From Asterias rubens (taxonomy: Eukaryota): a stretch of 64,000 nucleotides of DNA. The first letter of the stretch is position 1, and every line of letters begins with the position of its first letter. Location: the NCBI RefSeq assembly GCF_902459465.1, contig NC_047072.1, positions 17,174,001 through 17,238,000 on the forward strand, in the 5' to 3' direction. Made by a program: the position numbers and the translations under genes. The notes beneath the pieces were generated by a model. It did not search any database. It was not told the origin of the DNA and was given only the letters and a program-made list of their open reading frames with translations. This document shows, piece after piece, positions 281 to 34,379 of this stretch.

Positions 281-347
281 AAGAAAGTTCCATCCAACCA
301 GTCGGTCGTCTGTTACGACGTTTGTCAACTGGTCTTCATTAATTCTT
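281..347 (-). ncRNA. Type II SECIS element in the 3' UTR of deiodinase-like copy A
   Basis: Minus strand reads AAGAA-TTA-ATGAA-GACCAGTTG-AC-AAA-CGTC-GTAACA-GACG-AC-CGACTGGTT-GGAT-GGAACT-TTCTT. It has the AUGA/GA core, a 9-bp helix II, unpaired AAA, a CGTC/GACG mini-helix and an AAGAA/TTCTT helix I. It lies about 770 nt downstream of the stop codon of a gene with an in-frame TGA. Confidence 0.85.
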
Positions 348-661
348 GACGCAATAGGACCAATGAGGGCGCCCTCGTAGCTTTTCCGTTCCGCTCTTAA
401 ACTCGATAGGTGTTTAAGTCATGACATATATAATAGAGAGGCACAGTTATACGATGGTGTAATTAACTCAAAATACTACGATAAAGTGATAAAAAGTAAA
501 ATATTTTGTTTCTACATGACCTTGACCATAACTTGTGACTGTGCGAAAACTAATATTATGTTTTACAACTTTAGGGTTATAGTACACTTGTGCGATCGTA
601 ACAGCGACTATACTTTATTACATAATTACACAATTCAAATATTATAAAACTAAGTATGGTA

Positions 662-870
662 ATTAAAGGTACACGTTGCCTTGGATCGGCCGAGTTGGTC
701 TTTGAAAAGCGTTTGTAACCGTTTTTTTTTTTAAATAAAATGCATGGGTAGAAAGATGTAGAATATAATGATCCACACAAACATGCCTCGAAATTGCACG
801 GTTTTCCTTTTACCTCGTTGACTAACACGGTCGGCCAAAGTTGTGACTCCCATAAATGGCCGACCGTGTT
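662..870. mobile_element. Truncated TTAA-flanked MITE, family B
   Basis: Begins ttaaaggtacacgttgccttggatc, matching the end of the full copy at 16534-16916. Abuts an internal fragment of family A (about 885-1020). Confidence 0.65.
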
Positions 871-1111
871 ATTTCGCAGGGATTTTCGAAGTTTTCGAAA
901 AAGAAGTAATTTTTTCCACGAATTTGATTTCGAGACCTAAGATTTAGAATTTTGAGGTCTCGAAATCAAGCATCTGAAAGCACACAACTTCGTGTGACAA
1001 GGTTATTTTGTCTTTCATCAATATCTCGTGGAAACACAATACAATACAATAACAATTTGTTTACAGCTATATATATATATGTACACATCTCAATAAATAA
1101 AGAGCGATGGG

Positions 1112-1270
1112 CTATCTTCCGTTGACGGCAAAGTAGCTCTCCAACCATCCCCGTGTGTTATCAGTCATGAGTACGCTAGGTTCCATCATCTGCTTCCCGA
1201 TGTTGTCGCCGATGTACGCTACTTTGTCACCCTCAAAGGCAAACATTCTGTCTGGGTGTGCGTTGTACGT
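1112..1270 (-). CDS. DIO: Deiodinase-like selenoprotein copy A, last coding exon (exon 5)
   Basis: Acceptor ctctcttttattccgaacag, then TYNAHPDRMFAFEGDKVAYIGDNIGKQMMEPSVLMTDNTRGWLESYFAVNGR*. This aligns to the DIO Y-x-A-x-[PF]-[ED]-R-L-Y-V-I strand and to the C-terminus of copy B. Confidence 0.85.
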   Translation of the reverse strand, partial: TYNAHPDRMFAFEGDKVAYIGDNIGKQMMEPSVLMTDNTRGWLESYFAVNGR

Positions 1271-1791
1271 CTGTTCGGAATAAAAGAGAGAAAAGGACTA
1301 CAATCAGCCTTCATTTTGGACTAGATTTCCCCTTGTATGGGGCATCACACATCGAACAGCGCCCCCAATGAGGACAACATTTTCTCACTCGTTCACTTCT
1401 TGTCTCAATTTCGTCATGTAGTTGATGTTATTACTGGACTTTTTCTACTACCCCCATTCGATGCTCGTGAGCACTCTTACTGGCCGTTGTAAATTGTTGA
1501 TCGTGTCTATTTTCAATTGATATTTCTTTACTGCTGTCTACCTTTCCGAAAGCATTGTATGGACCCAACTCACATAAAGTCGTCGTCACAGCAATATTGA
1601 CTGCGTCATTTTGAGAGTCAACGCTTTTGGTGCGAACTTCATGGGACGCAGCGTTTACACGCGTATACCTGTTGACTTTAAAACATGATAAGCGTGCACA
1701 GAGTCACCACTCTTGTCTGGTGCAAGCAAAGGGGCCAATATCAATTTATGATCAGTACGTAATATTGGAGACATAACTGTGTACCACCAAC

Positions 1792-1900
1792 CTGAGCGAA
1801 GCTGTTTGTCATGGTGTCCAAGACGATTCGGACCAGGCTGTCATCGAGGGGGTCGTCTGTAAACGTGCGATGGTGTTCTTTATCTGCTGTTAACAGCAAA
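1792..1900 (-). CDS. DIO: Deiodinase-like copy A, exon 4
   Basis: Acceptor tacttcacag (phase 2), (N)LLLTADKEHHRTFTDDPLDDSLVRIVLDTMTNSFAQ, donor CAG|GTTGGT. Contains the DIO V[VL]DTM-x-N motif. Confidence 0.85.
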
Positions 1901-2451
1901 CTGTGAAGTAGTAGTATTGGGTAGAGAAGAAAGCAATCAATTTAAAAGTGCATTGTTCGAATTCATCTTGAAGTTTAGGGAAACTGTCAGTGAAAAGGAT
2001 CTTCCTCATGGAGCCTGGGTTCAACCCGATTGCCTTCGAAGTTAGAACTGGTTTGGCCGTAATGCGCCATTCCTTCACAGTATCGGAAGTTACCAGCTCA
2101 AATTTGTGTCAGTGTGGCAGCCACAGACCTTCAATTACATCTTTCATGACTGCCCTGACCTCAGACCACCATCAGGCGAGCAGGGTGGACCTTGCGTAGG
2201 ATAACGAGCAGGATGGACCTTGTCGAGGATACCAGCAAGTGGCTTAAAGTCACTAAACTACCAAGTAAATTTTTTTCAATATTCACTTAGGTCCAAAGAT
2301 CAAACGAAAGAAGAAAAAGGGGAAAAAATGGCAACAACCTGTGATTAACAGAACGTAACCAAAGGTGGCATGGAAATGAGTTCCTGTGATTTCAGGATGA
2401 TCTGCAAGAACCGTGCTTAGCCCGCACCAAATGTTTGAAATTGTCACTTAC

Positions 2452-2621
2452 TTGGCAGCGGCTATTCTTTCAGCCACCGTTCGATGATCTGGTACTTTGA
2501 AGGTTGTGTTGAGATTGAAGTACTCCGCAGGGTGGGCCTCAGCGAGATACACGCAGAGGAAGTCGGCCCGGTCCTTATACTCGCGGAAGAGCTGGGCTAG
2601 CGAACCGCCCAGGACACAGGC
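2452..2621 (-). CDS. DIO: Deiodinase-like copy A, exon 3
   Basis: Acceptor ctccaacag, ACVLGGSLAQLFREYKDRADFLCVYLAEAHPAEYFNLNTTFKVPDHRTVAERIAAA, donor AA|GTAAGT. Contains the DIO ADFLxxYxxEAH motif and the second conserved His (H-R-T-x-x-E-R). Confidence 0.9.
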
Positions 2622-2711
2622 CTGTTGGAGTGGAGGGATTAGAGAAAGAATTAGGCTATACGTGTATTTTGAAGACTTGTATCGGTGGTATCACATTGTC
2701 TGCCTACCTAT

Positions 2712-2947
2712 CGGTACGTTCGATAAGCTTCCCTGGGTCGACCCCGCAGTGATCACTCGGCGGGAGTGACCCCCTGACAAGAGCTAATCGAACGATCACA
2801 CCCGCCCTCTCGTGGTGACGGCATGCACCTCAGGTCACCCCCAAGTGACCCACTCCACAAGCAGGGACCCGAGTGAGCCCCGTCAAAGCTATTGGGACGT
2901 ACCGGGGCAGACCGGGGTCGACCCAGGGAAGCTAAACGAACGCACCA
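2712..2947. mobile_element. PIF/Harbinger-type palindromic MITE, family C
   Basis: Long TIRs ggtacgttcgataagcttccctgggtcgacccc / ggggtcgacccagggaagctaaacgaacgcacc with a TAT 3-bp flanking duplication. Sits in a copy A intron. Confidence 0.65.
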
Positions 2948-3324
2948 TATAAAAGAAACACTGAGTTGTCTTGGGCACGTGACTTTAAAAACTGCCTTTT
3001 AGACGTGGAAGTATATTATTTAGGATGCCGGTGAAATCTTAACTCTTTTGTGTAGATAATGTTCAAGCTGTTTTCAGAAGGATGTCTCACGAGTTGTGAT
3101 TGCAACATGTTGGTATGTTGATTTCGTTTTACTCCCGTTTCTGAACCTTGCAATGCCAAACATTAACTGTAAAAAATTGGCTCGTTACTTGACTGCATGG
3201 GTTTCCAGATAATGGACTTAACAATGGACCACCTAGTGTGAGTTTACTCTACTTAGTCAAACATAATAATCATAAAAGTTATTAAAGGAATATTTACATA
3301 ATTTTTTTTAATTATTTTTTTTAC

Positions 3325-3519
3325 CTGAAATGGAGGTCAGGAAATTGATGATGCGATGATGACGAGCGGTCTGTCTTTATGAAGGTGCAAGTCGGACATG
3401 CGCATTGGTTGTTGGGAGCGCATCGTAATGAGGTCAAGATCAGGTCGTTGACCGTTGACCTTGACGTCATCGATCATGCGCGGTGTCTTGGGGGATAGAT
3501 ACTTCAGTACGTTCATAAT
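3325..3519 (-). CDS. DIO: Deiodinase-like copy A, exon 2 with selenocysteine codon (TGA at 3337-3339)
   Basis: Acceptor ttcttgttttgtcag, IMNVLKYLSPKTPRMIDDVKVNGQRPDLDLITMRSQQPMRMSDLHLHKDRPLVIIASSIS-U-PPFQ, donor CAG|GTAAAA. Matches the DIO RPLVxNFGSxTUPPF active-site motif. Confidence 0.9.
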
Positions 3520-3621
3520 CTGACAAAACAAGAAGAAGACATAGTAACAATAGATTTAGGTTGTGAGTAGACTGGTCCCCTGTTTTTATCCGCAAGGAGA
3601 CAGACAGGCATTGGTTTTATA

Positions 3622-3782
3622 GGCCCTTTTCGAAACCAAGGCTTTGGATTCGGCTTCGGGCTCCATTTTCTCGTCTGAAGCCCTGAGCTCATACGCACCG
3701 CAATTATTGTCAAAACAACTGCGGGCCATACTTAAAGCCTGATCCGAATCTGGAGCCGAAAGCCGTGGTTTCGAAAAGGGCC
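3622..3782. mobile_element. PIF/Harbinger-type MITE
   Basis: TIRs ggcccttttcgaaacc / ggtttcgaaaagggcc flanked by an ATA direct repeat. A diverged relative lies near 43755-43880. Confidence 0.65.
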
Positions 3783-4508
3783 ATAGATCCAGTGTTTTTG
3801 ATGCACTGATATCATTGGATAAACTTGCAGTCACGTAAGCTTTCTTATCTGCGTTTTGATTGGTCCAAGGTGAGGGTTGTGTTGTCCCTATAATATGTAA
3901 ACTAATGTAATGCTGTGTTTTTGTATACATGTATGCATAATTTGCGAATATCTTTGTGAGTGCAAAGTTAAAGGTGTTGTTCTTTCATAGAAATCATACC
4001 CCCACCAAAATGACCCCCCCAACCACCAAAATAGAACTTTGCAACTAGAGCTATTACATGAGTGAACTCTTCAATTGTACTTCGATAAACCCGCCCTAGT
4101 TTTGATCCATAATGATCGCTCTTCTTATCAATGGTAAATAGAGCAATAAATAACCAAGGTTCTTCCTCAATCAATAATGAGGCTCACCCTCAATACGTGC
4201 TTCGAGGGCCAAATTGTTTTCCAGTTTGTTTGTTATGAAATGGTGTGAAATCTGTGGTGGAACTTCTGAGATTGTGGGGGAAAATGCCTTGAATGTCTAT
4301 GGAGGGTTGCAATCGTCTAGATTTTTCTGCAGAGATCATCATTTCTGATCACATATTGAGTTTGTTTGTTTGTTTGTTTGTTTGTTTTTCTGTGTTCTCT
4401 TTCATCTATAGTGTTTATCTATAGGGATTTTGTTTTTAAATGTGACTCTGTAAGCGCAATGAAGCATTATTTTCGATGGATTTGGTGCTATATAAATTGT
4501 TACTATTA

Positions 4509-4858
4509 TTAAGGCAAAGTATATACCTTTAGTTTTTATGGAACCGTTCGATTGTACATGTGAACATTTCTTTTCAAAAGGTGGCCGCGTCTTTAAGATA
4601 TCGCCGAAATTCCGGAGCTAACGATTATGTCCATGCAGGAAGAATACTTCCTAATATAAATGACAGGAGTACACAATCTGAGGAGCGTTACCGCAGTAAC
4701 GCTTCTTAGATTCAAACTTTGGGGCATAAACAAGATTTTAACAAAACCACATTACTTCGAAGTTATTTTTTTTTCTCCAAATGCTTTATTTTATCGGAAG
4801 CAGATGTAGGCTTCTATAGCGAAGAGTTTGTATTACCAAACGTATGCCTTCCTTTTAA
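4509..4858. mobile_element. Degenerate TTAA-flanked non-autonomous element, family H
   Basis: Ends ccaaacgtatgccttccttttaa, the reverse complement of the ttaaagggaagg...cgtttgg ends seen at 23071 and about 45725. Shares its TTAA with the next element. Confidence 0.45.
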
Positions 4859-5251
4859 AGGTAGTGGACACTATTGGTAATTACTCAAAATAATAATTAG
4901 CATAAAACCTTTTTTGATTACGAGTAATGGGGAGAGGTTGATAGTACAAAACGTTGTGAGAAACAGCTCCCTCTGAAGTGACTTAGTTTTTGAGAAAGAA
5001 GTATTTTTCCACGAATTTGATTTTCGAGACCTCAGATTTAGAATTTGAGGTCTCCAAATTAAGCATCTGAAAGCACATAACTTCGCGTGACCATGGTGCG
5101 ACAAGGGTGTTTTTTCTTTCATTATTATCTCGCAGCTTCGACGTCCGATTGAGCTCAAATTTTCACAGGTTTGTTATTTTATGCATATGTTGAGATACAC
5201 CAACTGTGAAGACTGGTCTTTGACAATTACAATAGTGTCCAGTGTCTTTAA
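4855..5251. mobile_element. TTAA-flanked MITE, family A (Kolobok-like termini), full length
   Basis: TIRs ttaaagg(c/t)agtggacactattggtaatt / aattac(c)aatagtgtccagtgtctttaa. Internal body is shared with many copies in the window. Confidence 0.85.
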
Positions 5252-6131
5252 CGTCTATACGTCCCGACACACGACGGCGTGAACATCTTAAAAGAGCAAG
5301 GCAAAGTTTGAATAAAATAATGTAATAATTATAAACTCCAGTAATTGTGTTTCCAATTTGTGATGAATTTACCTTTATTTGCAACCCTTATTAATAGGGT
5401 CCTTTATCAACCTTGGTCCTAGTGTTAAACATTGTGCAATAATTAACACATCAAAATAATGAAAAAACAAACATACACTAAACGTTCGCGACAACTCGAG
5501 AGATTTTAAAGTGTTTGTATAATTGATAACTGAACGAAAACTAACTTTATCTGCTCCCGTTTTACTTTTTGGGTAGTGGCTATTTCGTAATTCCTTAGTG
5601 TTTGGATTTGTGTTTGGTGCTTGACTTGTTGACATAAAATATATTTAGCAATTTATCTGGCCCCTATTTTTGTCTACCAGTAAATTGTTCTTTGTATTTG
5701 TATGTATATTATTGGTTTGATGTTTTTTTTTTTTGTTTTTTTTTTTTTTTTGGGGGGGGGGGGTAGTTGAATGGTGAGTCATTGTGTACGTGCTACGTTT
5801 GATTAAAACTAGATGGCCTTCTTTTGAACTGTAATTTGAAAAAAAACTATATGAACCACCGCTTTGAGCATTATTATTTATATACGTGATACCTTTTGTA
5901 AAGATATGGGACTGGCCATTATACGACTTTTCCGAACACTTTGTGAAATCGACCCATGACCCACTCTGGGTGACCCCTGACCCCTACTTGGTGTCTGGGT
6001 CAGACTGACCGACAACTGGTTTCTGGTTTAAGAAAATAATTTTAACTCAAATATCACAGTTAGTGTTATTAATGGTATGTTTTGGGTCACTTTAAGTGCT
6101 TCTTTTTCGTAAAACCATTATGGAAGTCATC

Positions 6132-6243
6132 TTAAAGGCAGTGGACACTATTTTCACGGGTTTGTTATTTTATGCATATGTTGAGATACACCAACTGTGA
6201 AGACAAGTCTTTGACAATTACCAATAGTGTCCAGTGTCTTTAA
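6132..6243. mobile_element. Family A MITE, internally deleted (both TIRs kept)
   Basis: The left TIR is joined directly to the last ~90 bp of the consensus. Confidence 0.8.
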
Positions 6244-7011
6244 AAAGCGGTTATGAGCATACCTCTTGATCATTCCTATATCTGGCCACAATAGGCATCA
6301 GCATGCCGTGGAATTTACTCCAATCTTTGATGTGTTTATCGAACCCCAGCTCTTCCAGTACCATCCGGTCCGTCTTAACGATGGCGCGCTGAAATAAAAA
6401 TAAAAATCCGTAACAAATAAAACCTACATCGTAAAAAAGAGAGGTAACAAACACTTTTTTGGTAACTTTTTATCATAGTTAACGCCCCCACAAAAAGTGC
6501 GAGGAGGTGCCATGCGGAAATTTTTGCGCATTCGTCCTTCACCCAACCACGTGTGTTTGACGCCTGCAACCCAAAGCAACCGCGTGGAACTCCTTTTGTC
6601 CCATTTGATTATAAACTTGTTGGCAACAGCTCCAACTGGCTTTGCACACGTTCTACTGTGAACCTTTCCCGAACTGTGGATCCTATTGTCATCTTTTGTT
6701 AAAGGCCCCCCCCCCCCGTTTGAATTTGAACATTTTGGTAGTCATTTTGATTGTGCCAATTGGTTTGTGGGAGAATGGTGTAGTCATTTATATAAATTGA
6801 CCCCCGATAAACCCATGTAAACGTTTAAAGGAACATTATGAACTCGAGCAATACGGAATTGGAAATGTTGACACGCTTTTGCTATGGGTTTGAATCAAGA
6901 TAATGTACGGCGTTGGTCATGTTAGAACCCTCTGCTTATTGTATGTTTACGGTCTTTGAATCAGTATAATGTACGGCTATGGTACTGTGGCAAACTTCTG
7001 CTACTGAGTAA

Positions 7012-7290
7012 TACGATAACTTTAGGAACTTCCTCAACAGCCAAAAACAAACTGAGTCAACTATCTATTAATTACCCGCTTGTACAAATTCGGTCTTTAC
7101 ACACAAATGTCTTAACCTAAACTCTAGAAATATAGCATTATTGTGAGTAAAGGCTACGATAACTTTAGGAACTTCCTCAAAACAGCCAAAAACAAACTGA
7201 GTCAACTATCTATTAAACACCCGCTTGGAAATTCGGTCTCTACACACAAATGTCTTAACCTAAACTCAAGAAATATAGCATTCTTGTGAG
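7012..7290 (+). repeat. Two-copy tandem duplication, 143-bp period
   Basis: tacgataactttaggaacttcctca...atatagcatt(a/c)ttgtgag at 7012-7147 and 7155-7290, near identical. Confidence 0.9.
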
Positions 7291-7297
7291 ACATTAC

Positions 7298-7480
7298 CTT
7301 GAGGTTAACCACCAGGCCTGGTTTGGTCGGATCATTAGCCAGAGCGAAGACTTGTTTCCCTTCTTCTCCTTCTAAGACCTCCCGCTGCTTCCTGACGATC
7401 CGGAGGACGACCTCTCGATCGGCTAGAAGCTCCCCGTCTATAACCATCATCGCCTCCCTCGCCGCGTTGCTCATCTGCAT
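7298..7480 (-). CDS. DIO: Deiodinase-like copy A, first coding exon (exon extends to an acceptor at 7531; start ATG at 7480 is inferred)
   Basis: accATG context, MQMSNAAREAMMVIDGELLADREVVLRIVRKQREVLEGEEGKQVFALANDPTKPGLVVNLK, donor AAG|GTAATG in phase 0. Aligns with copy B exon 2. The frame is open a further 17 codons to a tcttaacag acceptor, so an N-terminal extension is possible. Confidence 0.75.
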
Positions 7481-7743
7481 GGTGACAGAGGGCTCCCCCT
7501 CGGTGTTTTGGCCGCTCTCGCCTTCTTTACCCTGTTAAGAGGTGAACTGATGACTTCTCAAACTCTAAATTGGCATTGGACACGTTCGTTTGGCAATTGT
7601 CAAAGACAAGTATTCTCACTTGGTGTATCCCAACATGCATAAGAGAATAATCTGTGCAAATTTTACTCAATTTGTCATTGTATTTGCTCATCTTGATGGT
7701 GGCACCGGGCAGGGGAGGAGTGTTGGCTCTGAAATTAGCTGGT

Positions 7744-7793
7744 TTGGTCTCGACGTTTCGAACAGTAAACGCTAATCGTCTTCAGGAGACCAA
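7744..7793 (-). ncRNA. Minimal type I hammerhead ribozyme (Penelope-like element remnant)
   Basis: Minus strand TTGGTCTC-CTGAAGA-C-GATTAG-CGTTTA-CTGTTC-GAAA-C-GTC-GAGACCAA: 8-bp stem I, CUGANGA and GAAA cores, palindromic ACGU stem III and a GUC cleavage triplet. Confidence 0.7.
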
Positions 7794-7911
7794 CCGGCTC
7801 TTTTCAGAGCCAGCAATACTTCAAAAGATTATTATCACATGGTTGTGTCCGCAAAAGTTTAGACTTCAAACAGAATGTTAAATGAATTGATTATAGAAAA
7901 AAAATCGTATA

Positions 7912-8250
7912 TTAAAGATCTCAGATTTACATACAACTTATACGGTCTATACGATGATGATAACAGCAAGCATCCCTTGAAATATTTTATCTAAAGGGCC
8001 GCAATTATTAGATGAGCAATCAATAAAACTAATTTCCCGTTCGGAGTTTATCGCTCGGTGAGCGTTTTATTCATTTTTGTTTGGAATCGATGTCATGCAA
8101 AAAATGTGTCACCGGTTTTTCACTACTTTCTCGTGACCCATAATTGCCGATCGATCTCAACCTTCTACAGGTTTGTCAGAATGTATATGATGGACTTACA
8201 TAAAGTGCTTACGTTGCCAGTTTTATTAGCACAAAACATTTATGTAATGT
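7912..8250. mobile_element. TTAA-type non-autonomous element, family E
   Basis: Starts ttaaagatctcagatttacatacaacttatacggtc. An inverted homolog lies at about 13380-13720. Confidence 0.55.
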
Positions 8251-8585
8251 TCTGTTTATTATGAAATAACAAGCTTACACGCACATCGTAAAGGGAGAGG
8301 AAAAAACTAGAAAAAAACCTATCATGACAGTAGTGAGTTATATGATTATACAGTTGACACAAAAGTCACAGTGTTCATGTTTTGTGTGATCACCCGCATT
8401 GAAGTGTGTAAACCTCATTGAACAAAGGAAATAGTTTCATCAAAACTTTAACCCACATAGTAAACAACAGTTAAGAAGTATTATGGGTTGGGTTTAGTCA
8501 TTTTTATACGTGTTGGCTTAGTACAACAAATTGTGAGAAATGGCTCCTCTGAAGTCACGTAGTGAGGTAATTTTTCACTTAAGCA

Positions 8586-8969
8586 TTAAAGCCACTGGAC
8601 ACTATTGGTAATTTTCAAAGACTTGCATTCACAGTTGGTGTATCTCAACATAAGCATAAAATAACAAACCTGTGAAAATTTGAGCTCAATCGGTCGTCGA
8701 AGTTGCGAGATAATAATGGAAGAAAAAACACCATTGTCACCCGGAGTGTGTTCTTTCAGATGCTCGATTTCGAGACCTCAAAATTCTAAATCTGAGGTCT
8801 CAAAATCAAATTCGTGGAAAATTACTTCTTTATCGAAAACTACATTACTTCCGAGGTAGCCATTTCTCACGATGTTTTATATTATCAAACTCTCTCAATT
8901 ACTCGTTACCAAGAAAGGTTTTATGCTCAGAATTATGTTGAGTAATTACCAAGTGTCTACTGCCTTTAA
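8586..8969. mobile_element. Family A MITE, full length, opposite orientation
   Basis: Both TIRs with TTAA; partial copies adjoin on both sides (about 8500-8585 and 8975-9180). Confidence 0.85.
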
Positions 8970-9419: not shown

Positions 9420-9510
9420 GAAGTAGTGGTGGTTCTATGAGCAGAACCGGTGGTTTGAAACTCGACGTTTCGAGTAGTGTGCTGTGATTGTCTTCAGAAG
9501 AATGGTAGTT
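9420..9510 (-). mobile_element. Degenerate Penelope-like terminal remnant with a decayed hammerhead
   Basis: Retains CTGAAGA...GAAACGTCGAG on the minus strand, but stems I and II are disrupted. Same motif family as 7744-7793. Confidence 0.45.
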
Positions 9511-26369: not shown

Positions 26370-26756
26370 TTAAAGGCAGTGGACACTATTGGTAATTACT
26401 CAAAATAATTGTTATCATAAAACGTTTCTTGGTGGCGAATAATGGGGAGAGGTTGATGGTATAAAACATTGTGAGAAACGGCTCCCTCTGAAGTGCCATA
26501 GTTTTCGAGAAAGAAGTAATTTTCCACGAATTTTATTTCGAGACCTCAGATTTAGAACTTGAGGTCTCGAAATCAACCATCTAAACGCATACAACTTCGT
26601 GTGACAAGGGTGTTTTTTTCTTTCATTATTATCTCGCAACTTCGATGACCGATTGAGCTCAAATTTTCACAGGTTAGTTATTTTATGCATATGTTGAGAT
26701 ACACCAACTGTGAAGGCTAGTCTTTGACAATAACCAATAGTGTCCACTGCCTTTAA
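26370..26756. mobile_element. Family A MITE, full length
   Basis: Both TIRs with TTAA; close to consensus. Confidence 0.88.
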
Positions 26757-27103
26757 ATACAATTAGGTCTCGCTTCCTTTTCTTTTGTTGAATGTTATAA
26801 TAGTCCGTACCCTAAAGCGATTTATATGTGACGTCTTGATAGACCATTTCACCTCGACGGAACAATTGCAAAAATGTTCAATGGACTTTTATTGCTTAAA
26901 AATGTTGACTGCATTTTTGAGGGTTTTTTTGACAAAAGAGTGTGGGGACAAGGGGGACTTGTGAAATGAAAGAACTAGTGTTAACAGTTTGATGTGGTTG
27001 TGCTTTATGAATGGCTAAATAATTATGTGGATGTGTCGTAAAACAACCCAGTTAGTCTGCAACCCTAAATTGTGTTGAAAGATTATTACCATAGCGGGGC
27101 ATA

Positions 27104-27581
27104 TTAAAGGCAGTGGACACTATTGGTTATTGTTAAAGACTAGCATTCACAGTTGGTGTATCTCAACTTAGATTACCAATAGTGTCCAGTGTATTTAAAG
27201 ACAGCGGACACTATTGGTAATAATTATTGTCAGTCTTCTCACTTGGTGTATCTCATCATATACATAAAATAACAAACCTGTGAAAATTTGAGCTCAATCG
27301 GTTATCGAAGTTGCGAGATAATAATAAAAGAAAAAACGCCCTTGTCACACGAAGTTGTGTGCGTTATAGATGGTTGATTTCGAGACCTCAAGTTCTAAAC
27401 TTGAGGTCTCGAAATCAAATTCGTGGAAAATTACTTCTTTCTCGAAAACTATGGACACTTCAGAGGGAGCCGTTTCTCACAATGTTTTATACCATCAACC
27501 TCTCCCCATTACTCGTCACCAAGAAAGGTTTTATGCTAATAATTATTTTGAGTAATTACCAATAGTGTCCACTGCCTTTAA
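27104..27581. mobile_element. Family A mini-copy (27104-27198) fused through a shared TTAA to a full copy (27195-27581)
   Basis: TIR pairs on both units; junction gtatTTAAagacagcggacac. Confidence 0.8.
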
Positions 27582-28154
27582 ATGGTGCTCTAGATATTAC
27601 ACAAAAGGAGAAGATAGTGGAATAAGTTCGCTGTCTGTATACAGGGATGAACATTTTCACACAAAAATGCTAAATGTATCTGATAAAAGTCTGCTTTTGT
27701 TAAAAAAATAAATAAATAAAAAATATACATGGATGAGAAGTTTGACCCCACGTTTTTCAGAAATTTGGCTTGGAGCGTTCTGGAGAAAAACCCATTTTTA
27801 CCATGTTTTATCGTGAGGTAAGAGAGTCGTAATATATTTTAATGTTTCCTATGGACTGCAGCTGTTAGAAAACTGTCATATCTATATATTTGAGATCATC
27901 CTTTATTGGCTGTTTAAACTTTGTGAAGGACTGACAGAAGGCGCGGCACACGGACATTAAAATGTGGTGCACGGGTGAACTTGTAAGGTGTGTGTAAACA
28001 CAGTTTTAAGAAAAGCAAATAAACAGGGAGCTATGAAATAGGTCGGGTCGTTATTACATGAACAATAAATATATCCGGAAGGCCGTGAAAAATGAATTGC
28101 ACCAAAGTTAATGTCTTGGTAGATAAGGGGAGCAGAACTAGGCCGGGTCGTGCT

Positions 28155-28292
28155 NNNNNNNNNNNNNNNNNNNNNNNNNNNNNNNNNNNNNNNNNNNNNN
28201 NNNNNNNNNNNNNNNNNNNNNNNNNNNNNNNNNNNNNNNNNNNNNNNNNNNNNNNNNNNNNNNNNNNNNNNNNNNNNNNNNNNNNNNNNNNN
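28155..28292. other. Assembly gap (138 N); a family A MITE resumes on the right (28293 to about 28650)
   Basis: Run of N directly visible. Confidence 0.99.
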
Positions 28293-29039
28293 GTGGACAC
28301 TATTGGTAATTACTCAAAATGATTATTATCATAAAACCTTTCTTGACTACGAGTAATGGGGAGAGGTTGATAGTATAAAACATTGTGAGAAACAGCTCCC
28401 TCTGAAGTGACATAGTTTTCGAGAAAGAAGTATTTTTCCACGAATTTGAGGTCTCAAAATCAAGCATCTGAAAGCACACAACTTTGTGTGACAAGGGTGC
28501 TTTTTCTTTCATTAATATCTCACAACTTCGAAGACCAACTGAGCTCAAATTTTCACAGGTTTGTTATTTTATTCATTGAGATACACCAACTGTGAAGACT
28601 AGTCTTGTGAAGACTAGTCTTTGACTTACCAATAGTATTCAGAGTCTTTAGCGTCTTACACTAATGCCTGGTCTATATTCATAAATAATAAAGCCCTTAA
28701 AATGTGTTCTTGACTGTTTGAAGATTTTGAAATACAAAAAATAGAAACATTAAAAAATGAATTTATAACTTTTTCCCCTCAGCCAATTTAGACTACATCA
28801 TTTACCTTCAACGCCCGTGAGTCTAGCATAGGATAGCCTACTCATACTAAAGTACTAGTAAAACTATAACGTTAGGCCTAGGCCTACCGTTAGGGCCATA
28901 CGTTAACGTTAGTTTTCTTTAAACAACCCACCATCGATTTGCATCAGTCGGAATTCTCCTCCGGATCCATCATCGTACGGGACAGCTTTCACTTAGTCTT
29001 ACTAAGCCGTCAACGTGAATACAGTAATTACACACTCAA

Positions 29040-29204
29040 GTCGTGAAAAAATCGCGACTAGTCGTGAAAAATTTCGTGACGTCGCCAAAATATTCGCGAC
29101 TTGGCGCGAATAAATTCACGACGTCGCAAAAATATTCACGACGTTGCAAAAATATTCGTGACTTGTCGTAAATAAATTCACGACGTCGCAAAAATATTCA
29201 TGAC
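29040..29204. repeat. Degenerate ~20-21 bp minisatellite
   Basis: Repeated units such as tcacgacgtcgcaaaaatatt and tcgtgacttgtcgtaaataaat. Confidence 0.75.
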
Positions 29205-30105
29205 TGGCTGTGTCCCTTCAGGATCGTGTTGCCAAAAAAAAACCATGTAGGAACCAGACGATTTTGCTTATAGCTCGTTAGGGTTAATTTGCTAATTGAC
29301 TGATCACCAGACAGTGGGAATAATCAAGGACTATTGGTAGTAACTTATTGCATTACTTACACGTGCTTCATATTATGAGTGCTCTGCCAAGGTGAATTGG
29401 TTCTATAGCTAATGAGTCAAGTCATAAAGGAAATTTAAAGTATTATACCCAATTAAACAGACATTTTAAAGCGATGTTTATTTTTTACCATGGCAACTTA
29501 ATGTATTGTTAATTCGAAAAAAACTCATAGAGTTGGGGTTGACTATGCCTCAGAGGGACTGGCAACACAACATTTGAAGCATTAGTGAGAAAATGACCGT
29601 CTTGAGTAGTTTGATTTTTCTCTTGCTTGAGATGTTTCTTAAGGTTTCAGCATCTGATAATGTTGTTAATGGTGTTTACCGATGGGTCTGGTACCAGCCG
29701 GTACAGCACCAGACCCTACTACAAACAAACAATCGAACAAACAAGGTATGAAATTCCGTTTTATTTCTTCGTTAATTTCCCAACCATAAATATTAGTTGT
29801 GTCTCAAAATAATAGTTTTAAAAGGAAGTTGTATAACATTAAATACAGAAAAGTAAAATATCAAACAGAATGGGCGCTCCCCTTGAAAGGACAACATTTA
29901 CCAAAGAGTCATCATGGGTTATTCTAGGGGTTTAATAATTATGCAACTTCCATTTAGTCATTTGTTTTAAACACATTATTAGTGGATTGATTTTGAAAAT
30001 GCTAGCATCCCATGTATTTTGATAAACCAGTGAATTATATTTCAGAATTTGTTGAAACAGTTTAATATTGGTTATAAACCGCCAAAACGCACCCCAGCAT
30101 TCAAT

Positions 30106-30256
30106 GTGGGACTTTTGCGAGGCTAGGCGGAAGCAGTTGACTTACCAGGTAAATCCATTGTTTTCGTTAATGTGTGCATAAAAAATCTGCTCGGGACTAC
30201 GTAAAAAATGGTATACCTTATAAGTATGCTGCCACCAAGAGTTCTAAAGTCTCCCA
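30106..30256. mobile_element. Short MITE in the copy B 3' region; a relative lies at 40553-40698
   Basis: tggga(ga)ctttt...aaagtctccca termini and a shared body (gacttaccaggtaaatccattgtt). Confidence 0.6.
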
Positions 30257-30360
30257 ATAAGTTTCGCCAATATATAACCAATTGTTTTTTTATAGGTCAC
30301 TGTAATAAAGAAAAAATTAAAAAAAATAACAAAAATCTGCTTTAACTTTTTTTTAAACAC

Positions 30361-30619
30361 TTATTCCTGACTGAATCGCTTCTCTAACCACACCTTGACC
30401 TCATCCGTCATGAGCTTATCCGGTTTCTTCAACTGTTGTCTGACTTCCTTACACATGAACGCCACTCTACCACTCTCAACGACGATGATACGGTCTGGGT
30501 GCGCGTCGTATTGCAGGGCGAATTTGTTGTCCATGGTGTCCAGCACCAGTCTAAGTTTGTCCTGGCTGTGTGTGTCGTCAGTGAAGGTGTTGTGATTAGA
30601 GTCTCTTGCCATCATTTCT
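30361..30619 (-). CDS. DIO: Deiodinase-like selenoprotein copy B, last coding exon (exon 5)
   Basis: Acceptor ttttgacag (phase 2), (R)EMMARDSNHNTFTDDTHSQDKLRLVLDTMDNKFALQYDAHPDRIIVVESGRVAFMCKEVRQQLKKPDKLMTDEVKVWLEKRFSQE*. DIO VLDTMDN and YxAxPDR motifs. Confidence 0.9.
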
Positions 30620-30853
30620 CTGTCAAAATAAACAAAATAATAATACTTGGTTATAATTTAGCGCTTTATCAAAGACCTAGAGGCGTCCTTTAAAGCAGCA
30701 TGTATTGGTTTACAGAGTTCGGTGTGCTTCCCCTTCTCTGTGCGAACAGTGCACTTGAATCTTTTAAGTGCATTACGCAACACACGGGGCCTGCAGCTTT
30801 ACGTCCCATCCGAAGGACGCAGCAGTAATGTGATTATTTTGAAAATTTCTTAC

Positions 30854-31026
30854 CGAGCGACGTCTATTCTATCTTGAATTGTTTTGTGCTGGTCCATAAA
30901 GCTGAACTCGTCGCTGAAGACCCAGCGCCCTCTTGGGTGAGCCTCTGCCAGGTAGACGCAGAGGAAATCGGCCCGGTCCTTGTAGTCTTTGAACAATGCG
31001 TTCAAAGTGCCACCAAGAACTATGGC
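30854..31026 (-). CDS. DIO: Deiodinase-like copy B, exon 4
   Basis: Acceptor ccag, AIVLGGTLNALFKDYKDRADFLCVYLAEAHPRGRWVFSDEFSFMDQHKTIQDRIDVA, donor CG|GTAAG. Same phases (0/2) as copy A exon 3. Confidence 0.9.
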
Positions 31027-31831
31027 CTGGATCCAAATAAATACGAAGAGTTTATCAATAGTTAGATACATGTACAAGGACTTATAGTTAACAAGAGAGG
31101 TTCCCTGAGCCATTACGTTTGTGACTTGTTTTTACTCATTTCTCAAAACTACATCACCCAATCCCAGCAAGTAATATTTTAAAGGAAGCTTTCTACCGCC
31201 ATTACCTTTAAACCATGTAATGTAAACATGTGGACGTTGTGTTTTGTGTCCTATAACGAGTACCCAACCGTTTCAACTACGAGGTTTAATCGAGTATTAT
31301 TTTATTTTTTTAATTTCTCCAGAAAACTGTCAGCTCATGTCTGTCCCATGTGAGAGATAAAACTCCACCTTTTAACAGCTAGAGAGACATTCCCATCTTG
31401 AGAAAGGTAAGCGCAAACCCGTGCATAATTTAAACTCTTTTGTTATTCTATATGAATAGACAGAAATGGATTTTAAGTCAAACGATTCTGCATTTTGTCA
31501 AAAGGATATTGTTTTCAGTCCGATGCGGATCCCGCTCACCCCTTAATCTGCCACAAATCCCGCCCCCTCCATTCGGGAGTTACGAGTAACTGATAGGGCC
31601 AATGCGTCCGAACCATCTCCATCTCGATCTCTATTGGTTAAGTCAGCAAAATATCCTGCCGGATACATCAACGCTAACTTGATTCCGATTGCTATGGCTA
31701 CGGAGTTTAACTCTTTCTAAGTCATTAGACTAATCCTAAGTTAGGAAGAGTTTGGTGAAATCGACGGCTGGAACCTTTCTATGAGTACAAAGAAAACTGG
31801 TGCATTTTTAAGGGGAGGAAATTAATCTTAC

Positions 31832-32023
31832 CTGAAACGGGGGTCAGGAGAGTGAAGACGCCACCAACACGAGAGGGCGCTCTTTATGAGTGTGTAAGCT
31901 CATGATTGGCACGACGTCATTACCCAAGGTGACCACACCCACATCTTCGGCTGCACTGCCAATTTCAAAATTTAATCCCATTTGTTTGATGAAGACCACA
32001 AACTTAGTGACCTCTGCCATGAC
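31832..32023 (-). CDS. DIO: Deiodinase-like copy B, exon 3 with selenocysteine codon (TGA at 31844-31846)
   Basis: Acceptor tttatgtttcag, VMAEVTKFVVFIKQMGLNFEIGSAAEDVGVVTLGNDVVPIMSLHTHKERPLVLVASSLS-U-PPFQ, donor CAG|GTAAG at the same position as in copy A. Confidence 0.9.
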
Positions 32024-33266
32024 CTGAAACATAAACCGATAATGGTTATTATAACTAGTCCTTCAAAATAACTCGTTCTTATAAATTGACCTGTTTATAG
32101 ACCTACTTCAAAAAGGTCATAATTACGTCCTTCGCATTTGTGTTTCTTATGCTCTTTACATCGTACTCACAATGATATCCTAAGTTGGACTATTCCATAC
32201 ATCCTATGAGGGGTGTCAATCAACAGGTACCAGTGATTTGTGTTAGAAAAGGGCACAATAATACTCAGCCCGCGTCCTTTGTGTACAAAATCGGAATCGG
32301 AGGTAGTTGATTCGAGTCTAGACTAGACCCAAAGACAGGTCCCTGCCGCCAGATCCAGTGATTCCATTGGATACAATGATATCATTTAATAAACGTGACA
32401 AGATATAGATGCCCAAACAGTCACTGCTGTCATGTATGCAATAGAATTTGACTGCGTATCTCTATGTGAAATGAAAGTTGGTCAAAGGTGAATATACACG
32501 TCGGTATCGAGGCAGGTCTCTGGCGTTATTCACGAGCCTCGAAGTGTGACGTCAGTAGGTTCAGGCTAGTTCGAGTCCCGCTTTAGTCAATTTTTCTTGA
32601 TTTTCATCATCTTACCTCGGGATCAAATCGCCAATTTACGAAGAGGGTGTCCAATATTCCAGCGAATTTGTTCCAGTCACTGATTGCCGGGCCCAGACCA
32701 AGTTCCTCTATCGCTAGTCGCTCGGTCTGTTTCCTAACTTTCTAAAAAAAAAAAAAAAAAAATTAAACAATTACTACGATGCAAATATTTTCGTTAATAG
32801 TATGTCAACACAACTTTTTTTTTTTCTAAATCCAACTTTCCTCTATCACTTATCACTCAGTCTGTTTCCTTACTTTCAACAAACAAACAATTTTTTTTTT
32901 CCCTTTTGTTTAGGCAAATAAATCAACGATATCTGGCAACAAAAGTTTTATTTTCTTCATCCAAGTATATGTCCGTCCTCGTTTGCTTGGCCCTAAGCAC
33001 AATTGCATAGACCTGTATTAAGCAAAACAAAATTCTGCTGAGCAGAATAAGGTTACCTGCCAAAATAACGATCTGTGATCCAAACAAACAACCCCCATTT
33101 AATTTTTTTTTTTCAAAAACCCATCAACGACCAAACGCCCCAACAAACAAATAAACTGCATCTCAATAACAACAACTGTTCGTTGTGAGTTTTTATTCTT
33201 TAGTGTTTTGTTGGTACTTTCAGACGACTCAAACTTCACAGAGAAATCAAATAAGTCAAATTATAC

Positions 33267-33428
33267 CTCAAAGTCGACCAGTGCCTTTGGTTGCCGGGGA
33301 TCGAATCCATCTTCGAACAACTGTTTTGTTGATTCCCGTCCAGTGATCTCTACCCACTTTCTGAAGATGGCCAGGGCGCCCTCTTTGTCGTTGAAAAGCT
33401 CTACACCTTGTGCGTCTGGCGGAAAAAC
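33267..33428 (-). CDS. DIO: Deiodinase-like copy B, exon 2
   Basis: Acceptor ggttttgtag, VFPPDAQGVELFNDKEGALAIFRKWVEITGRESTKQLFEDGFDPRQPKALVDFE, donor GAG|GTATAA, phase 0/0. Colinear similarity to the first exon of copy A. Confidence 0.8.
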
Positions 33429-34322
33429 CTACAAAACCAGATGGGAGGTAACAATAAAAGGTAGTTTTAAAATGCAGAGAGTAAATGCTATTCGGTTAAA
33501 GGCACTGGGCACTACTGGTAAATTGTCAAAAATAAATGTTTGTTAACGAGCAATGGAGAGCTGTTGATAGTATTAAACATTGTTAGAAATGGCTCCCTCT
33601 GAAGTAACATAGTTTTTGAGAAAGAGGTTATATCTCACTCAAATATAATAATATTAACAGATTTCATCAAGCATGAAGCCTTTTATTATGCATCTGAAAG
33701 CCCACGCATCTATAAAAGCCAACACATTTGTGACACAGACGTGTTTTTCTTCTTCTTTTACTATTACTTGCAACTTCAAAGACGAATTGAGTATATTTTG
33801 TACATATTTGTTATGTTATGCATAATAAGCTGCGGACACCAGTGACTCTTTTGATGCTCAGTGGTTCAGTTGACGAGCAGCCCTCTCCTCCAAACATTGT
33901 TAATAATTTTTACGTGTCAACAAGCACAGTTTCGGTCAATCATTTCCAACGTGCTTTGTGAGTTTTTAAAAGTATGACCTTTTTTCGCCCCTTTAGCCCC
34001 TTATGGCATACACGAGTCTGTACATGGCTAGTCGCACATGGTACAGTGAAATTCGTTTTGGTTTTGAGTGTCTAAAAATATGTTTTACAGAAAGACACAC
34101 TAAAATTTACCATTATACAAAAATACATCGAATAATTATAGAATACAAACATGAAAAGTACAGTACAATATACAGGCGACCTAATACGAAAGATGTATTG
34201 ATGTTCTAAGCTTGCAAATGGTGTTAAGCAATTTTTATTTAATATTCACCCAGATGTATGGAGACGCCCCAACACAAACCCCCAAACAGAATTCCAAAAA
34301 AATCACAAAATCTTTTACTTAC

Positions 34323-34379
34323 CATATCTTCATTCTTTACTCTCCCCTGGTCTCCGGAGCCTGGCCCCGTACCCGCCAT
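34323..34379 (-). CDS. DIO: Deiodinase-like copy B, putative first coding exon
   Basis: gcagcATGG start context, MAGTGPGSGDQGRVKNEDM, strong donor ATG|GTAAGT in phase 0 matching exon 2. No homology support, so less certain than the other exons. Confidence 0.6.

What the first reader, a model, noticed from the sequence alone, without database searches (positions are those of the whole stretch)
281..34379. Tandem pair of divergent deiodinase-like selenoprotein genes hidden from the ORF track
Seen in the sequence: two 5-exon minus-strand genes about 23 kb apart. Both have GT-AG introns with consistent phases, an in-frame TGA at the position of the deiodinase selenocysteine, and the YxxEAH, H-x-x-x-x-[DE]R, DTMxN and YxAxPDR motifs. 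Established knowledge: these motifs define the thioredoxin-fold iodothyronine deiodinase family. Inference: they form a distinct invertebrate subfamily that arose by old tandem duplication, since the two are well diverged yet resemble each other more than vertebrate DIO1/2/3. They may act on iodinated or brominated substrates other than T4/T3. Automated annotation would probably truncate both at the TGA.
Basis: partly seen in the sequence, partly recalled or inferred. Interest (0 to 1): 0.82.

Follow-up and report, generated by a model that had tools for sequence, protein, structure and literature searches.

The report
Two soluble deiodinase-like selenoprotein genes
Two neighbouring genes in this echinoderm (probably sea-star) sequence encode selenocysteine-containing relatives of the thyroid-hormone deiodinases that have a helical head instead of the usual membrane anchor; they are real and expressed, but they belong to a known enzyme family whose invertebrate copies are routinely mis-annotated.

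Summary
Two minus-strand genes, A (281-7480) and B (30361-34379), each give one intact GT-AG-spliced frame with a single in-frame TGA at the deiodinase selenocysteine position (SS[IL]S-U-PPFQ).

- **Exons:** each gene has six coding exons, not five. Spliced RNA contigs from four runs confirm B's structure. A's is inferred by colinearity.
- **Family:** exon pieces pass Pfam PF00837's cut-off.
- **Relatives:** these are hemichordate and echinoderm "deiodinase-like" predictions and unnamed marine transcripts. Two transcript sets and two acorn-worm genomic loci carry the same TGA.
- **Clade:** they form a clade (97/96) apart from the few classical-type deiodinases I could include. A and B are 41% identical; B has a closer orthologue in another species, so the duplication is old.
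- **Architecture:** there is no membrane helix. A folded relative shows a five-helix head plus a Dio2/Dio3-like core.
- **SECIS:** gene A has a form-2 SECIS at 347-281, below Rfam's threshold. None was found for B.
- **Gap:** the assembly gap lies between the genes, in no exon, so adjacency rests on the scaffold join.

The scan holds no earlier deiodinase note on other DNA. The substrate is untested.

The parts
7298..7480 (-). Gene A coding exon 1 (ATG at 7480; 61 codons of the helical N-terminal domain)
   Evidence: ATG, GTAATG donor, phase 0. Homologous to B exon 2 and to the N-termini of relatives.
6263..6388 (-).
   Evidence: TTTCAG acceptor and GTATGC donor. tblastn match to B's RNA-confirmed exon. 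Colinear with transcripts L004/L007. Not checked with RNA.
3325..3519 (-). Gene A coding exon 3, ending ...RPLVIIASSIS-U-PPFQ; Sec codon TGA at 3339-3337
   Evidence: The TGA aligns with the Sec/Cys of deiodinases.
2452..2621 (-). Gene A coding exon 4 (ACVLGG...YLAEAHP...DHRTVAER)
   Evidence: PF00837 34.6 bits against a cut-off of 27. Splice sites.
1792..1900 (-). Gene A coding exon 5 (...IVLDTMTNSFAQ); the intron after it is absent from gene B
   Evidence: Phase-consistent CACAG acceptor and GTTGGT donor.
1112..1270 (-). Gene A coding exon 6 (TYNAHPDR... to stop TAG at 1114-1112)
   Evidence: Words of 281-1290 are held by RNA runs X1 (0.73) and X2 (0.64), about as fully as by runs of unrecorded library type (0.58-0.72).
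281..347 (-). Gene A SECIS element, form 2 (AUGA ... AAA bulge, mini-stem ... GA), 765 nt after the stop
   Evidence: Rfam SECIS_1 24.6 bits, E 0.045, below the gathering score of 35. The minimum-energy fold gives helix I, internal loop, 9-bp helix II, AAA bulge and mini-stem, z -2.57. One of six hits of my pattern scan over both strands of the 64 kb.
34323..34379 (-). Gene B coding exon 1 (ATG 34379, or the ATG that ends the exon at 34325-34323)
   Evidence: GTAAGT donor, phase 0. 70-249 nt of RNA contig lie upstream of exon 2, and depth in bin 34201-34400 fits a donor at 34323. The junction itself was not listed.
33267..33428 (-). Gene B coding exon 2 (N-terminal domain, homologous to A exon 1)
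   Evidence: RNA contig pieces 33267-33426/9 in four runs. Sequence.
32616..32741 (-).
   Evidence: RNA contig pieces 32614-32733 plus 8 unplaced contig bases, which I read as lying in the skipped repeat at 32734-32773. Joint 32021/32614 (cut +2, GT..AG) in all four runs. Sequence.
31832..32023 (-). Gene B coding exon 4, ending ...RPLVLVASSLS-U-PPFQ; Sec codon TGA at 31846-31844
   Evidence: RNA contigs run straight through the TGA in four runs..
30854..31026 (-). Gene B coding exon 5 (AIVLGG...YLAEAHPRGRW...QHKTIQDR)
   Evidence: PF00837 40 bits. Joint 30619/30854 in four runs.
30361..30619 (-). Gene B coding exon 6 (DTMDN, YDAHPDR, to stop TAA)
   Evidence: PF00837 31.4 bits. RNA contigs. 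The identical 84-aa ORF occurs on marine metagenome contigs.
29171..30360 (-). Gene B 3' UTR supported by RNA (at least 1,190 nt; a further contig covers 28577-29137); no SECIS detected
   Evidence: X1 contig is contiguous 30619 to 29171. SECIS searches were negative.
28155..28292 (.). Assembly gap between the two genes, next to a high-copy repeat; in no exon
   Evidence: N run located. The flank 28300-28576 is a repeat with RNA word depth above 2 million in run X1.

Best explanation
Genes A and B are two expressed paralogues of a deiodinase-family (Pfam T4_deiodinase) selenoprotein. The named members of their clade are from echinoderms and hemichordates.

Shown:
- Each gene has six coding exons.
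- Each encodes about 315-320 residues: a helical, non-membrane N-terminal domain of about 110-150 residues, then a thioredoxin-fold deiodinase core.
- The core's active-site residue is encoded by UGA, in the context SS[IL]S-U-PPFQ.

Inferred:
- The UGA is read as selenocysteine with the help of a 3'-UTR SECIS hairpin. One was found for A and none for B.
- The enzyme is cytosolic and soluble.
- It removes a halogen reductively from an aromatic substrate, as Dio1-3 do. The Sec attacks the halogen, and the conserved proton relay delivers the proton. The relay is Ser at -3, Ser at -1 (Thr in Dio), Tyr/Glu/His of Y-L-A-E-A-H and His of [QD]H-x4-[DE]R.

The physiological substrate is unknown. The two copies arose by an old duplication and now share 41% identity.
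For: Gene models:
- One frame each, all introns GT-AG, one TGA each.
- B's splicing and read-through-compatible mRNA appear in four RNA runs under two species labels. Introns have zero depth, so this is not DNA contamination.
- A's last exon and 3' UTR are held by the same RNA runs.

Family:
- PF00837 scores above the cut-off on three exon pieces.
- The Cys-form relative P0027 hits mouse Dio3 4TR3 (E 2.4e-13) and Dio2 9H48 by sequence.
- Its AlphaFold model (pLDDT 85.6, pTM 0.84) has them as top Foldseek hits, TM 0.76 by target.

Selenocysteine:
- The same in-frame TGA, with a conserved frame after it, occurs in transcripts L004/L005 and L006/L007 of other species.
- It also occurs in two Glandiceps genomic loci.
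- A sea-cucumber member has Cys at that site.
- Gene A has a SECIS.

Architecture and catalytic residues:
- There is no N-terminal hydrophobic helix. The Kyte-Doolittle maximum is at the active-site strand.
- Residues of the relay described for Dio2/Dio3 (PMC11592359) are present in A and B.
Against: - No SECIS was found for B in 1.8 kb of RNA-supported 3' UTR or anywhere between the genes.
- A's SECIS scores below Rfam's gathering threshold (24.6 against 35 bits).
- A's five junctions were not tested with RNA, because the single read-laying run went to B.
- The fold was predicted for a relative about 30% identical, not for A or B.
How the oxidised enzyme would be recycled is unclear.
- Trp of EAHPSDGW is Phe in A.
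- No activity or selenium-incorporation data exist.
- Of the six species differences listed in B's last exon, four change the amino acid, so the C-terminal tail is not tightly constrained.
Confidence: 0.78

Rival explanations
1. The proteins are real selenoproteins of the deiodinase fold but are not dehalogenases. They would act as soluble peroxiredoxin-like or thiol-disulfide oxidoreductases, or on some other redox substrate.
For: - After Dio3 and Dio2, the next structural matches are ResA/TlpA-type thiol-disulfide oxidoreductases, peroxiredoxins and GPx.
- Structural look-alikes carrying PF00837 occur in fungi and bacteria, which have no thyroid hormone.
- The membrane anchor and linker that support Dio dimerisation are absent (PMC11592359).
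- Two insertions relative to classical deiodinases (about 11 and 6 residues) lie near the DTM and C-terminal strands.
Against: - The residues described as the Dio proton relay and the substrate-facing His are conserved (PMC11592359).
- Dio3 and Dio2 are far better matches than any oxidoreductase (E 1e-11 against 1e-5).
- No CxxC/UxxC motif is present.
Confidence: 0.2
2. Gene B is a transcribed but non-functional or decaying copy. Without a SECIS its mRNA terminates at the UGA and yields only a 173-residue N-terminal fragment.
For: - No SECIS was found in any assembled sequence downstream of B.
- Jiang et al. report invertebrate selenoprotein clusters with SECIS-less members and read those as pseudogenes (PMC3473315, section 10).
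- Four of the six listed interspecies changes in the last exon are non-synonymous.
Against: - The frame after the TGA is intact for 148 codons and keeps every family motif.
- By my tally, the second species label differs at about 2% of coding positions, against about 7% plus indels in the 3' UTR.
- An orthologue in a third species keeps the TGA and 58-59% identity along its whole length.
- RNA contigs break at a repeat array at 29040-29200, and a repeat plus an assembly gap follow. The 3' end of the mRNA has not been seen.
- Rfam also missed the hemichordate SECIS candidates.
Confidence: 0.12
3. The two genes are not neighbours. The scaffold join across the gap is wrong and the 'tandem pair' is an assembly artefact.
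For: - The gap (28155-28292) lies between the genes and is flanked by a very high-copy repeat.
- In Glandiceps the paralogues looked up lie megabases apart on one chromosome.
Against: - Nothing here speaks against the join.
- Tandem deiodinase clusters are common in marine invertebrates (PMC3473315).
Confidence: 0.1

Closest known systems
Vertebrate iodothyronine deiodinases DIO1-3 (structures: mouse Dio3 4TR3/4TR4, mouse Dio2 9H48)
   Same: - Pfam PF00837.
- Sec at the same position before P-P-F.
- Y-x-x-E-A-H-P, [QD]H-x4-[DE]R, DTM-x-N and WLE motifs.
- Thioredoxin-fold core: Dio3 and Dio2 are the top Foldseek hits for a family member.
   Different: - No transmembrane helix or linker. A five-helix N-terminal domain of about 110-150 residues stands in their place.
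- SS[IL]SU instead of GS[CA]TU.
- No Cys two residues before Sec and none before VLDTM.
- Two insertions of about 11 and 6 residues.
- Only 24-26% identity.
- Separate clade in the tree.
Automatically predicted 'thyroxine 5-deiodinase-like' and 'type I/II iodothyronine deiodinase-like' proteins of Ambulacraria (Saccoglossus XP_002738953.1, Ptychodera XP_070540590.1, Glandiceps XP_077995044.1, Apostichopus XP_071818869.1, Lytechinus XP_063954930.1)
   Same: - Same clade, same N-terminal domain, same motifs.
- The window's genes sit in the subclade holding the echinoderm members.
   Different: - Most public models lack the Sec-bearing piece, although the Glandiceps loci I checked hold the TGA.
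- The sea-cucumber member has Cys instead of Sec.
- Identity to A and B is 29-37%.
Tandem clusters of deiodinase (DI) selenoprotein genes in marine invertebrates (Branchiostoma, Trichoplax, Lottia; Jiang et al. 2012, PMC3473315)
   Same: - Duplicated DI selenoprotein genes sit side by side.
- Some members have no detectable SECIS.
   Different: - Echinoderms and hemichordates were not among that paper's six invertebrates.
- The passages I read do not mention the helical N-terminal architecture.
Other invertebrate deiodinases cited in the review PMC10083991: ascidian (Shepherdley 2004), amphioxus non-selenoprotein TRIAC deiodinase (Klootwijk 2011), scallop, oyster, and the sea-urchin Sp-Dio genes (PMC9856734)
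   Same: - Non-vertebrate members of the family.
- Several paralogues per genome.
- Substrate preference can differ from T4/T3, as with amphioxus TRIAC.
   Different: - No sequences of these were available here, so their relation to this clade is untested.
- None is described in those papers as soluble with a helical N-terminal domain.
Mucoromycota proteins with ubiquitin-like plus T4_deiodinase domains (ESM Atlas cluster, 52 members) and two long unnamed AlphaFold DB cluster representatives
   Same: The predicted structure of the family member aligns over nearly its whole length, including most of the helical head (TM 0.75 by query, residues 3-315).
   Different: - These are much longer proteins with extra domains.
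- Only 20-22% identity to the two unnamed AlphaFold DB representatives.
- This is a comparison of predicted structures only, with no sequence or tree test.

Membership tests
Iodothyronine deiodinase family (Pfam PF00837 T4_deiodinase) | Match to the family profile above Pfam's curated cut-off (27 bits) | tested here: met
   A exon 4 scores 34.6 bits, B exon 5 scores 40.0 bits and B exon 6 scores 31.4 bits. Pieces were searched apart, so whole-protein scores would be higher.
Iodothyronine deiodinase family (Pfam PF00837 T4_deiodinase) | Sec (UGA) or Cys at the active-site position after strand beta-1, followed by P-[PS]-F | tested here: met
   A has ASSIS-TGA-PPFQ and B has ASSLS-TGA-PPFQ. These align with GSAT-(TGA read as W)-PPF of the DIO2-type row P0044 and, through P0027, with SCT-C-PPF of 4TR3.
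Iodothyronine deiodinase family (Pfam PF00837 T4_deiodinase) | Proton-relay and substrate residues described for Dio2/Dio3 (Ser -3, Thr -1, Tyr/Glu/His of Y-I-x-E-A-H, Trp five residues after that His, His of H-x4-DR; PMC11592359) | tested here: met
   Ser, Tyr, Glu and both His are present in A and B. Thr is replaced by Ser in both. Trp is kept in B (EAHPRGRW) and is Phe in A (EAHPAEYF).
Iodothyronine deiodinase family (Pfam PF00837 T4_deiodinase) | Thioredoxin-fold catalytic core resembling solved deiodinase structures | tested here: met
   Tested by proxy only. The AlphaFold model of clade member P0027 (pLDDT 85.6) has 4TR3 and 9H48 as top Foldseek hits, E 3e-11 and 1e-10, TM 0.76 by target. 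A and B themselves were not folded.
Iodothyronine deiodinase family (Pfam PF00837 T4_deiodinase) | Reductive deiodination of iodothyronines | not testable with these tools
   Needs enzyme assays.
Classical membrane-anchored DIO1/2/3-type deiodinases | N-terminal transmembrane helix and linker before the catalytic core (PMC11592359) | tested here: not met
   The highest 19-residue Kyte-Doolittle mean is 1.65-1.67, at the active-site strand, and nothing hydrophobic lies in the first 150 residues. The relative's model has five amphipathic-length helices at residues 26-112.
Classical membrane-anchored DIO1/2/3-type deiodinases | Placement inside the DIO1-3 clade in a tree | tested here: not met
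   All 28 clade rows, including A and B, are split from the classical-type rows P0042/P0044 by a 97/96 branch. Only two classical-type rows and two more distant rows were available, so sampling is thin.
Eukaryotic selenoprotein gene | In-frame UGA with conserved coding sequence downstream, shared with orthologues or replaced by Cys in homologues | tested here: met
   The same UGA and a conserved downstream frame occur in transcripts L004/L005 and L006/L007 and in Glandiceps loci L008/L009. Apostichopus P0027 and P0040 have Cys.
Eukaryotic selenoprotein gene | [quoted passage not shown] | tested here: inconclusive
   Gene A has all core features at 347-281, with a form-2 fold. It scores only 24.6 bits against Rfam's 35. 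Gene B has none in 28293-30360, none in 7600-28154, and the gap is unread.

The most novel reading that the evidence does not exclude
The clade is an ancient, soluble, Sec-dependent branch of the deiodinase superfamily, and its helical head plus core architecture predates animals, since structural look-alikes occur in Mucoromycota. On this reading, echinoderms and hemichordates keep several paralogues as cytosolic dehalogenases for halogenated phenols or iodotyrosine-like compounds rather than for T4/T3. Thyroid-hormone deiodination by membrane-anchored DIOs would then be only one specialisation of a wider dehalogenase family.
Probability: 0.2. Interest if true: 0.65.

Novelty: new variant of a known kind. 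Interest (0 to 1): 0.42.

Why it matters
Thyroid-hormone-like signalling in echinoderms is under active study, and "deiodinase" genes are cited as evidence for it (PMC9856734, PMC10083991). This work shows that at least part of the echinoderm and hemichordate deiodinase-like repertoire has three properties:
- It is a separate, non-membrane clade.
- It uses selenocysteine.
- It is mis-modelled in public annotation. Most listed public models lack the Sec-bearing piece, and the two Glandiceps loci checked carry the TGA that their models omit.

Treating these genes as T4-to-T3 converting enzymes is therefore not justified without assays. Corrected gene models are the precondition for expressing and testing them. 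The result also adds a family to the list of selenoprotein genes that standard pipelines break.

Tried and rejected
- **SECIS for gene B.** All searches were negative, or hit only a palindromic repeat array (29040-29200) or the high-copy repeat.
  - Rfam at E up to 10 on 28300-30500, 25600-28154 and 7600-25700.
  - An ungapped pattern scan at two stringencies.
  - A duplex-energy scan of every UGA/GA pair.
  - Reading every ATGA and GTGA in the 3' UTR by eye.
- **Rfam sensitivity.** Rfam also missed SECIS candidates downstream of the Glandiceps genes that the pattern scan found. The model is insensitive for this family.
- **Classical deiodinase sequences for the tree.** Two word-indexed homology searches returned almost only the clade itself. 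I used the few PF00837 rows that appeared (P0041-P0044).
- **RNA test of gene A.** An exact search of JGI metagenome contigs for A's exon 3/4 junction found nothing.
- **N-terminal domain.** The language-model atlas gave no hit above noise (best 0.71), and Pfam gave nothing.
- **First gene models.** My own first five-exon models were replaced after the RNA contigs.
- **Fragment alignment.** An alignment that included N-terminal fragments was misaligned and was not used for folding.
- **Gene conversion between A and B.** Considered because of a 45-nt stretch with 40 identical bases. Rejected because third-base identity there (9 of 17) matches the gene-wide 0.50.
- **Spliced proteins in tools.** I did not type spliced proteins into any tool, so A and B were never searched or folded as whole proteins.

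Full report
**The gap.** The only N run is 28155-28292.
- It lies 2,069 nt downstream of gene B's stop codon (30361) and about 20.7 kb upstream of gene A's ATG (7480). It is inside no exon of either model, so no reading frame depends on it.
- Its right flank (28300-28576) is a copy of a very high-copy repeat, with RNA word depth above two million in run X1. That probably explains the gap.
- Two things do depend on it. The genes sit on opposite sides, so their adjacency and the "23 kb" spacing rest on the scaffold join. And B's 3' UTR runs towards it.
- I did not try to read or fill it.

**Gene models.** Each had one frame, GT-AG introns and one in-frame TGA.
- Laying the contigs of four RNA runs (two species labels) on 28401-34400 showed one spliced transcript in every run. 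Its pieces were 33267-33426/9, 32614-32733, 31831/2-32021, 30854-31025/6 and 30619 down to 29171.
With the 8 contig bases left unplaced next to the skipped T-run at 32734-32773, it is 32741-32616: 126 nt, phase 0 on both sides.
- Several intron bins have zero depth, for example 31401-31600 and 32801-33000, so these runs are RNA and not DNA.
- The homologous exon of gene A is at 6388-6263, with a TTTCAG acceptor and a GTATGC donor.
- Final models:
  - A: 7480-7298, 6388-6263, 3519-3325, 2621-2452, 1900-1792, 1270-1112 (313 aa).
  - B: 34379-34323, 33428-33267, 32741-32616, 32023-31832, 31026-30854, 30619-30361 (322 aa).
- Both models are colinear, without extra gaps, with proteins read from transcript contigs of other species. 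No further exon is missing.
- A has an intron between ...SFAQ and TYNAHPDR that B lacks. B has a short extra 5' coding exon.
- B's exon 1 junction was not listed. The 70-249 contig bases upstream of exon 2 and the depth in the last bin fit a donor at 34323.
- A's splicing was not tested with RNA. Its last exon and 3' UTR (281-1290) are held by RNA runs X1 and X2 about as fully as by runs of unrecorded library type (0.73 and 0.64 against 0.58-0.72).

**Selenocysteine.**
- The TGA codons (A 3339-3337, B 31846-31844) sit in RPLV[IL][IV]ASS[IL]S-TGA-PPFQ, directly before the exon's donor.
- RNA contigs run through B's TGA.
- Transcript contigs of other species carry the same TGA. L004/L005 read ...IIIASSLS*PPFQACVLGG and L006/L007 read ...VIISSSLS*PPFQACVLGG. 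The conserved frame continues to a common C-terminus.
- Two genomic loci of the acorn worm Glandiceps hold ASSLS*PPLR and ASSLT*PPLR. The protein annotated at L009 (P0020) jumps from ...RPLV to AIVHSG, and the one at L008 (P0005) begins only after the TGA.
- A sea-cucumber member has Cys there, SSSIS-C-PLLK.
- Gene A has a SECIS-like hairpin at 347-281, 765 nt after its stop.
  - Rfam SECIS_1 scores it 24.6 bits, E 0.045, below the gathering score of 35.
  - The free-energy fold gives helix I, an internal loop with AUGA opposite GA, a 9-bp helix II, an unpaired AAA and a mini-stem. That is form 2, z -2.57.
  - It was one of six hits of my pattern scan over both strands of the window.
- For gene B I found nothing, despite five kinds of search over 7600-30500.
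  - RNA contigs break at a palindromic repeat array (29040-29200).
  - A further contig covers 28577-29137. Then come the repeat and the gap. The 3' end of B's mRNA has not been seen.
  - Rfam also missed AUGA...AAA...GA candidates about 300 nt after the Glandiceps stops.

**Family.**
- Exon pieces pass Pfam PF00837's cut-off of 27 bits: A 34.6, B 40.0 and 31.4.
- The full-length Cys-form relative P0027 matches mouse Dio3 (4TR3, E 2.4e-13) and Dio2 (9H48) by sequence.
- Its AlphaFold model (pLDDT 85.6, pTM 0.84) has five helices between residues 26 and 112, followed by a thioredoxin fold.
- Foldseek ranks 4TR3 and 9H48 first (TM 0.76 by target), far ahead of ResA-type oxidoreductases.
- A and B keep the residues that PMC11592359 describes as the Dio proton relay: Ser, Thr (here Ser), Tyr, Glu and two His.
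- B keeps the Trp of EAHPSDGW. A has Phe there.

**A separate, non-membrane clade.**
- A full HMMER scan of 1.84 billion representatives with B's last exon found only 33 proteins.
- The named ones are "deiodinase-like" predictions from Saccoglossus, Ptychodera, Glandiceps, Apostichopus and Lytechinus.
- Neither A nor B has a hydrophobic stretch before the active-site strand.
- In a maximum-likelihood tree of 32 rows, the 28 clade members are split from the classical-type rows P0042 and P0044 by a 97/96 branch.
  - A and B fall in a 92/81 subclade with the echinoderm rows.
  - B is sister to transcript L007 (97/96). A is unresolved beside L004.
  - Outgroup sampling is thin, because the word-indexed searches returned almost only the clade.
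- A and B are 39-41% identical, and 24-26% identical to the DIO2-type row.
- Third codon positions at identical residues agree in 60 of 119 cases. The duplication is old and shows no sign of gene conversion.
- The architecture is probably older than animals. The model's whole length aligns (TM 0.75 by query) with a Mucoromycota cluster carrying ubiquitin and T4_deiodinase domains. It also aligns with two long unnamed AlphaFold DB representatives. This rests on predicted structures only.

**Mechanism.**
- Shown: two transcribed genes with a Sec codon in a deiodinase core, and no membrane anchor.
- Inferred: UGA is recoded through a SECIS, and the protein is a cytosolic enzyme. Its selenolate would attack an aromatic halogen, with the conserved relay supplying the proton, as proposed for Dio2/Dio3.
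- Unknown: the substrate, the reductant and the role of the helical head.
- There is no Cys two residues before Sec and none before VLDTM.
- A and most echinoderm-clade members have Cys six residues after Sec (U-P-P-F-Q-A-C), but B has Ile. I only noted this.

**What is known.**
- Jiang et al. (PMC3473315, section 10) described tandem clusters of deiodinase selenoprotein genes in amphioxus, Trichoplax and Lottia. Some members lacked a SECIS.
- Sea-urchin work lists many Dio-like loci (PMC9856734).
- Reviews cite a sea-urchin deiodinase gene as part of a thyroid-like pathway (PMC10083991).
- I found no paper in the held library that describes this soluble clade or its Sec codon.
My tree agrees only as far as "echinoderm subclade".
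- The scan holds no deiodinase note on other DNA.

**Verdict.** This is a real pair of selenoprotein genes and a distinct variant of a known family. The exon count is corrected. One SECIS was found and one is missing. The function is untested.

Noticed in passing
window 917-978, 14869-14917, 22087-22135, 24940-24988, 26530-26577, 27373-27421, 28300-28576, 33540-33700 and others: A short interspersed repeat with a perfect hairpin recurs on both strands. It gives weak mir-3036-like Rfam hits and repeated ORF fragments such as MENYFFLENY...LPITRYQ. It reaches RNA word depths above two million in run X1. One copy abuts the assembly gap and another lies in gene A's 3' UTR.
   Followed up: partly
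window 29040-29200: An array of roughly 20-nt palindromic units (CGACGTCGTGAATATTTTTG-like) lies in gene B's 3' UTR. The transcript contigs of runs X1 and X2 end beside it, and those of X3 and X5 stop aligning at 29040. It also produces the best false SECIS and miRNA-like hits.
   Followed up: partly
window 7791-7835 (+): A histone 3' UTR stem-loop match of 33.1 bits (gathering 34, E 3e-06) lies about 310 nt upstream of gene A's ATG on the opposite strand. No histone ORF was seen next to it.
   Followed up: no
window 23433-23587 (-), related copies near 2497-2952 and 19552-19881: A long inverted repeat gives a MIR7724-like hit of 66.8 bits, below gathering. It sits inside another repeated element whose ORFs read ...SFSFPGSTPVCG....
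   Followed up: no
window 55493-57265 (-): ORFs with reverse-transcriptase motifs (YADD) suggest a non-LTR retrotransposon fragment.
   Followed up: no
L008 2030-2182 and L009 8120-8266 (Glandiceps talaboti, OZ203281.1): Both acorn-worm paralogues carry an in-frame TGA (ASSLT*PPLR, ASSLS*PPLR) that the deposited protein models avoid. AUGA...AAA...GA hairpin candidates lie about 300 nt after each stop (L008 4237-4282, L009 10777-10820).
   Followed up: partly
gene A residue 169 (window about 2618-2616); gene B residue 180: Cys six residues after Sec (U-P-P-F-Q-A-C) is present in gene A, in L004, L007 and the sea-urchin members, and as K-V-C in the sea cucumber. It is Ile in gene B and in hemichordates. 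It could be a resolving cysteine, or a difference in recycling between the two paralogues.
   Followed up: no
L001, L002 (ENA marine metagenome assemblies), runs X12 and X13 (marine metatranscriptomes): Gene B's last exon occurs with identical protein sequence on coastal marine metagenome contigs. Gene A's 3' region shares words with marine metatranscriptomes. The animal's DNA and RNA, from larvae or shed cells, are evidently common in seawater samples.
   Followed up: no
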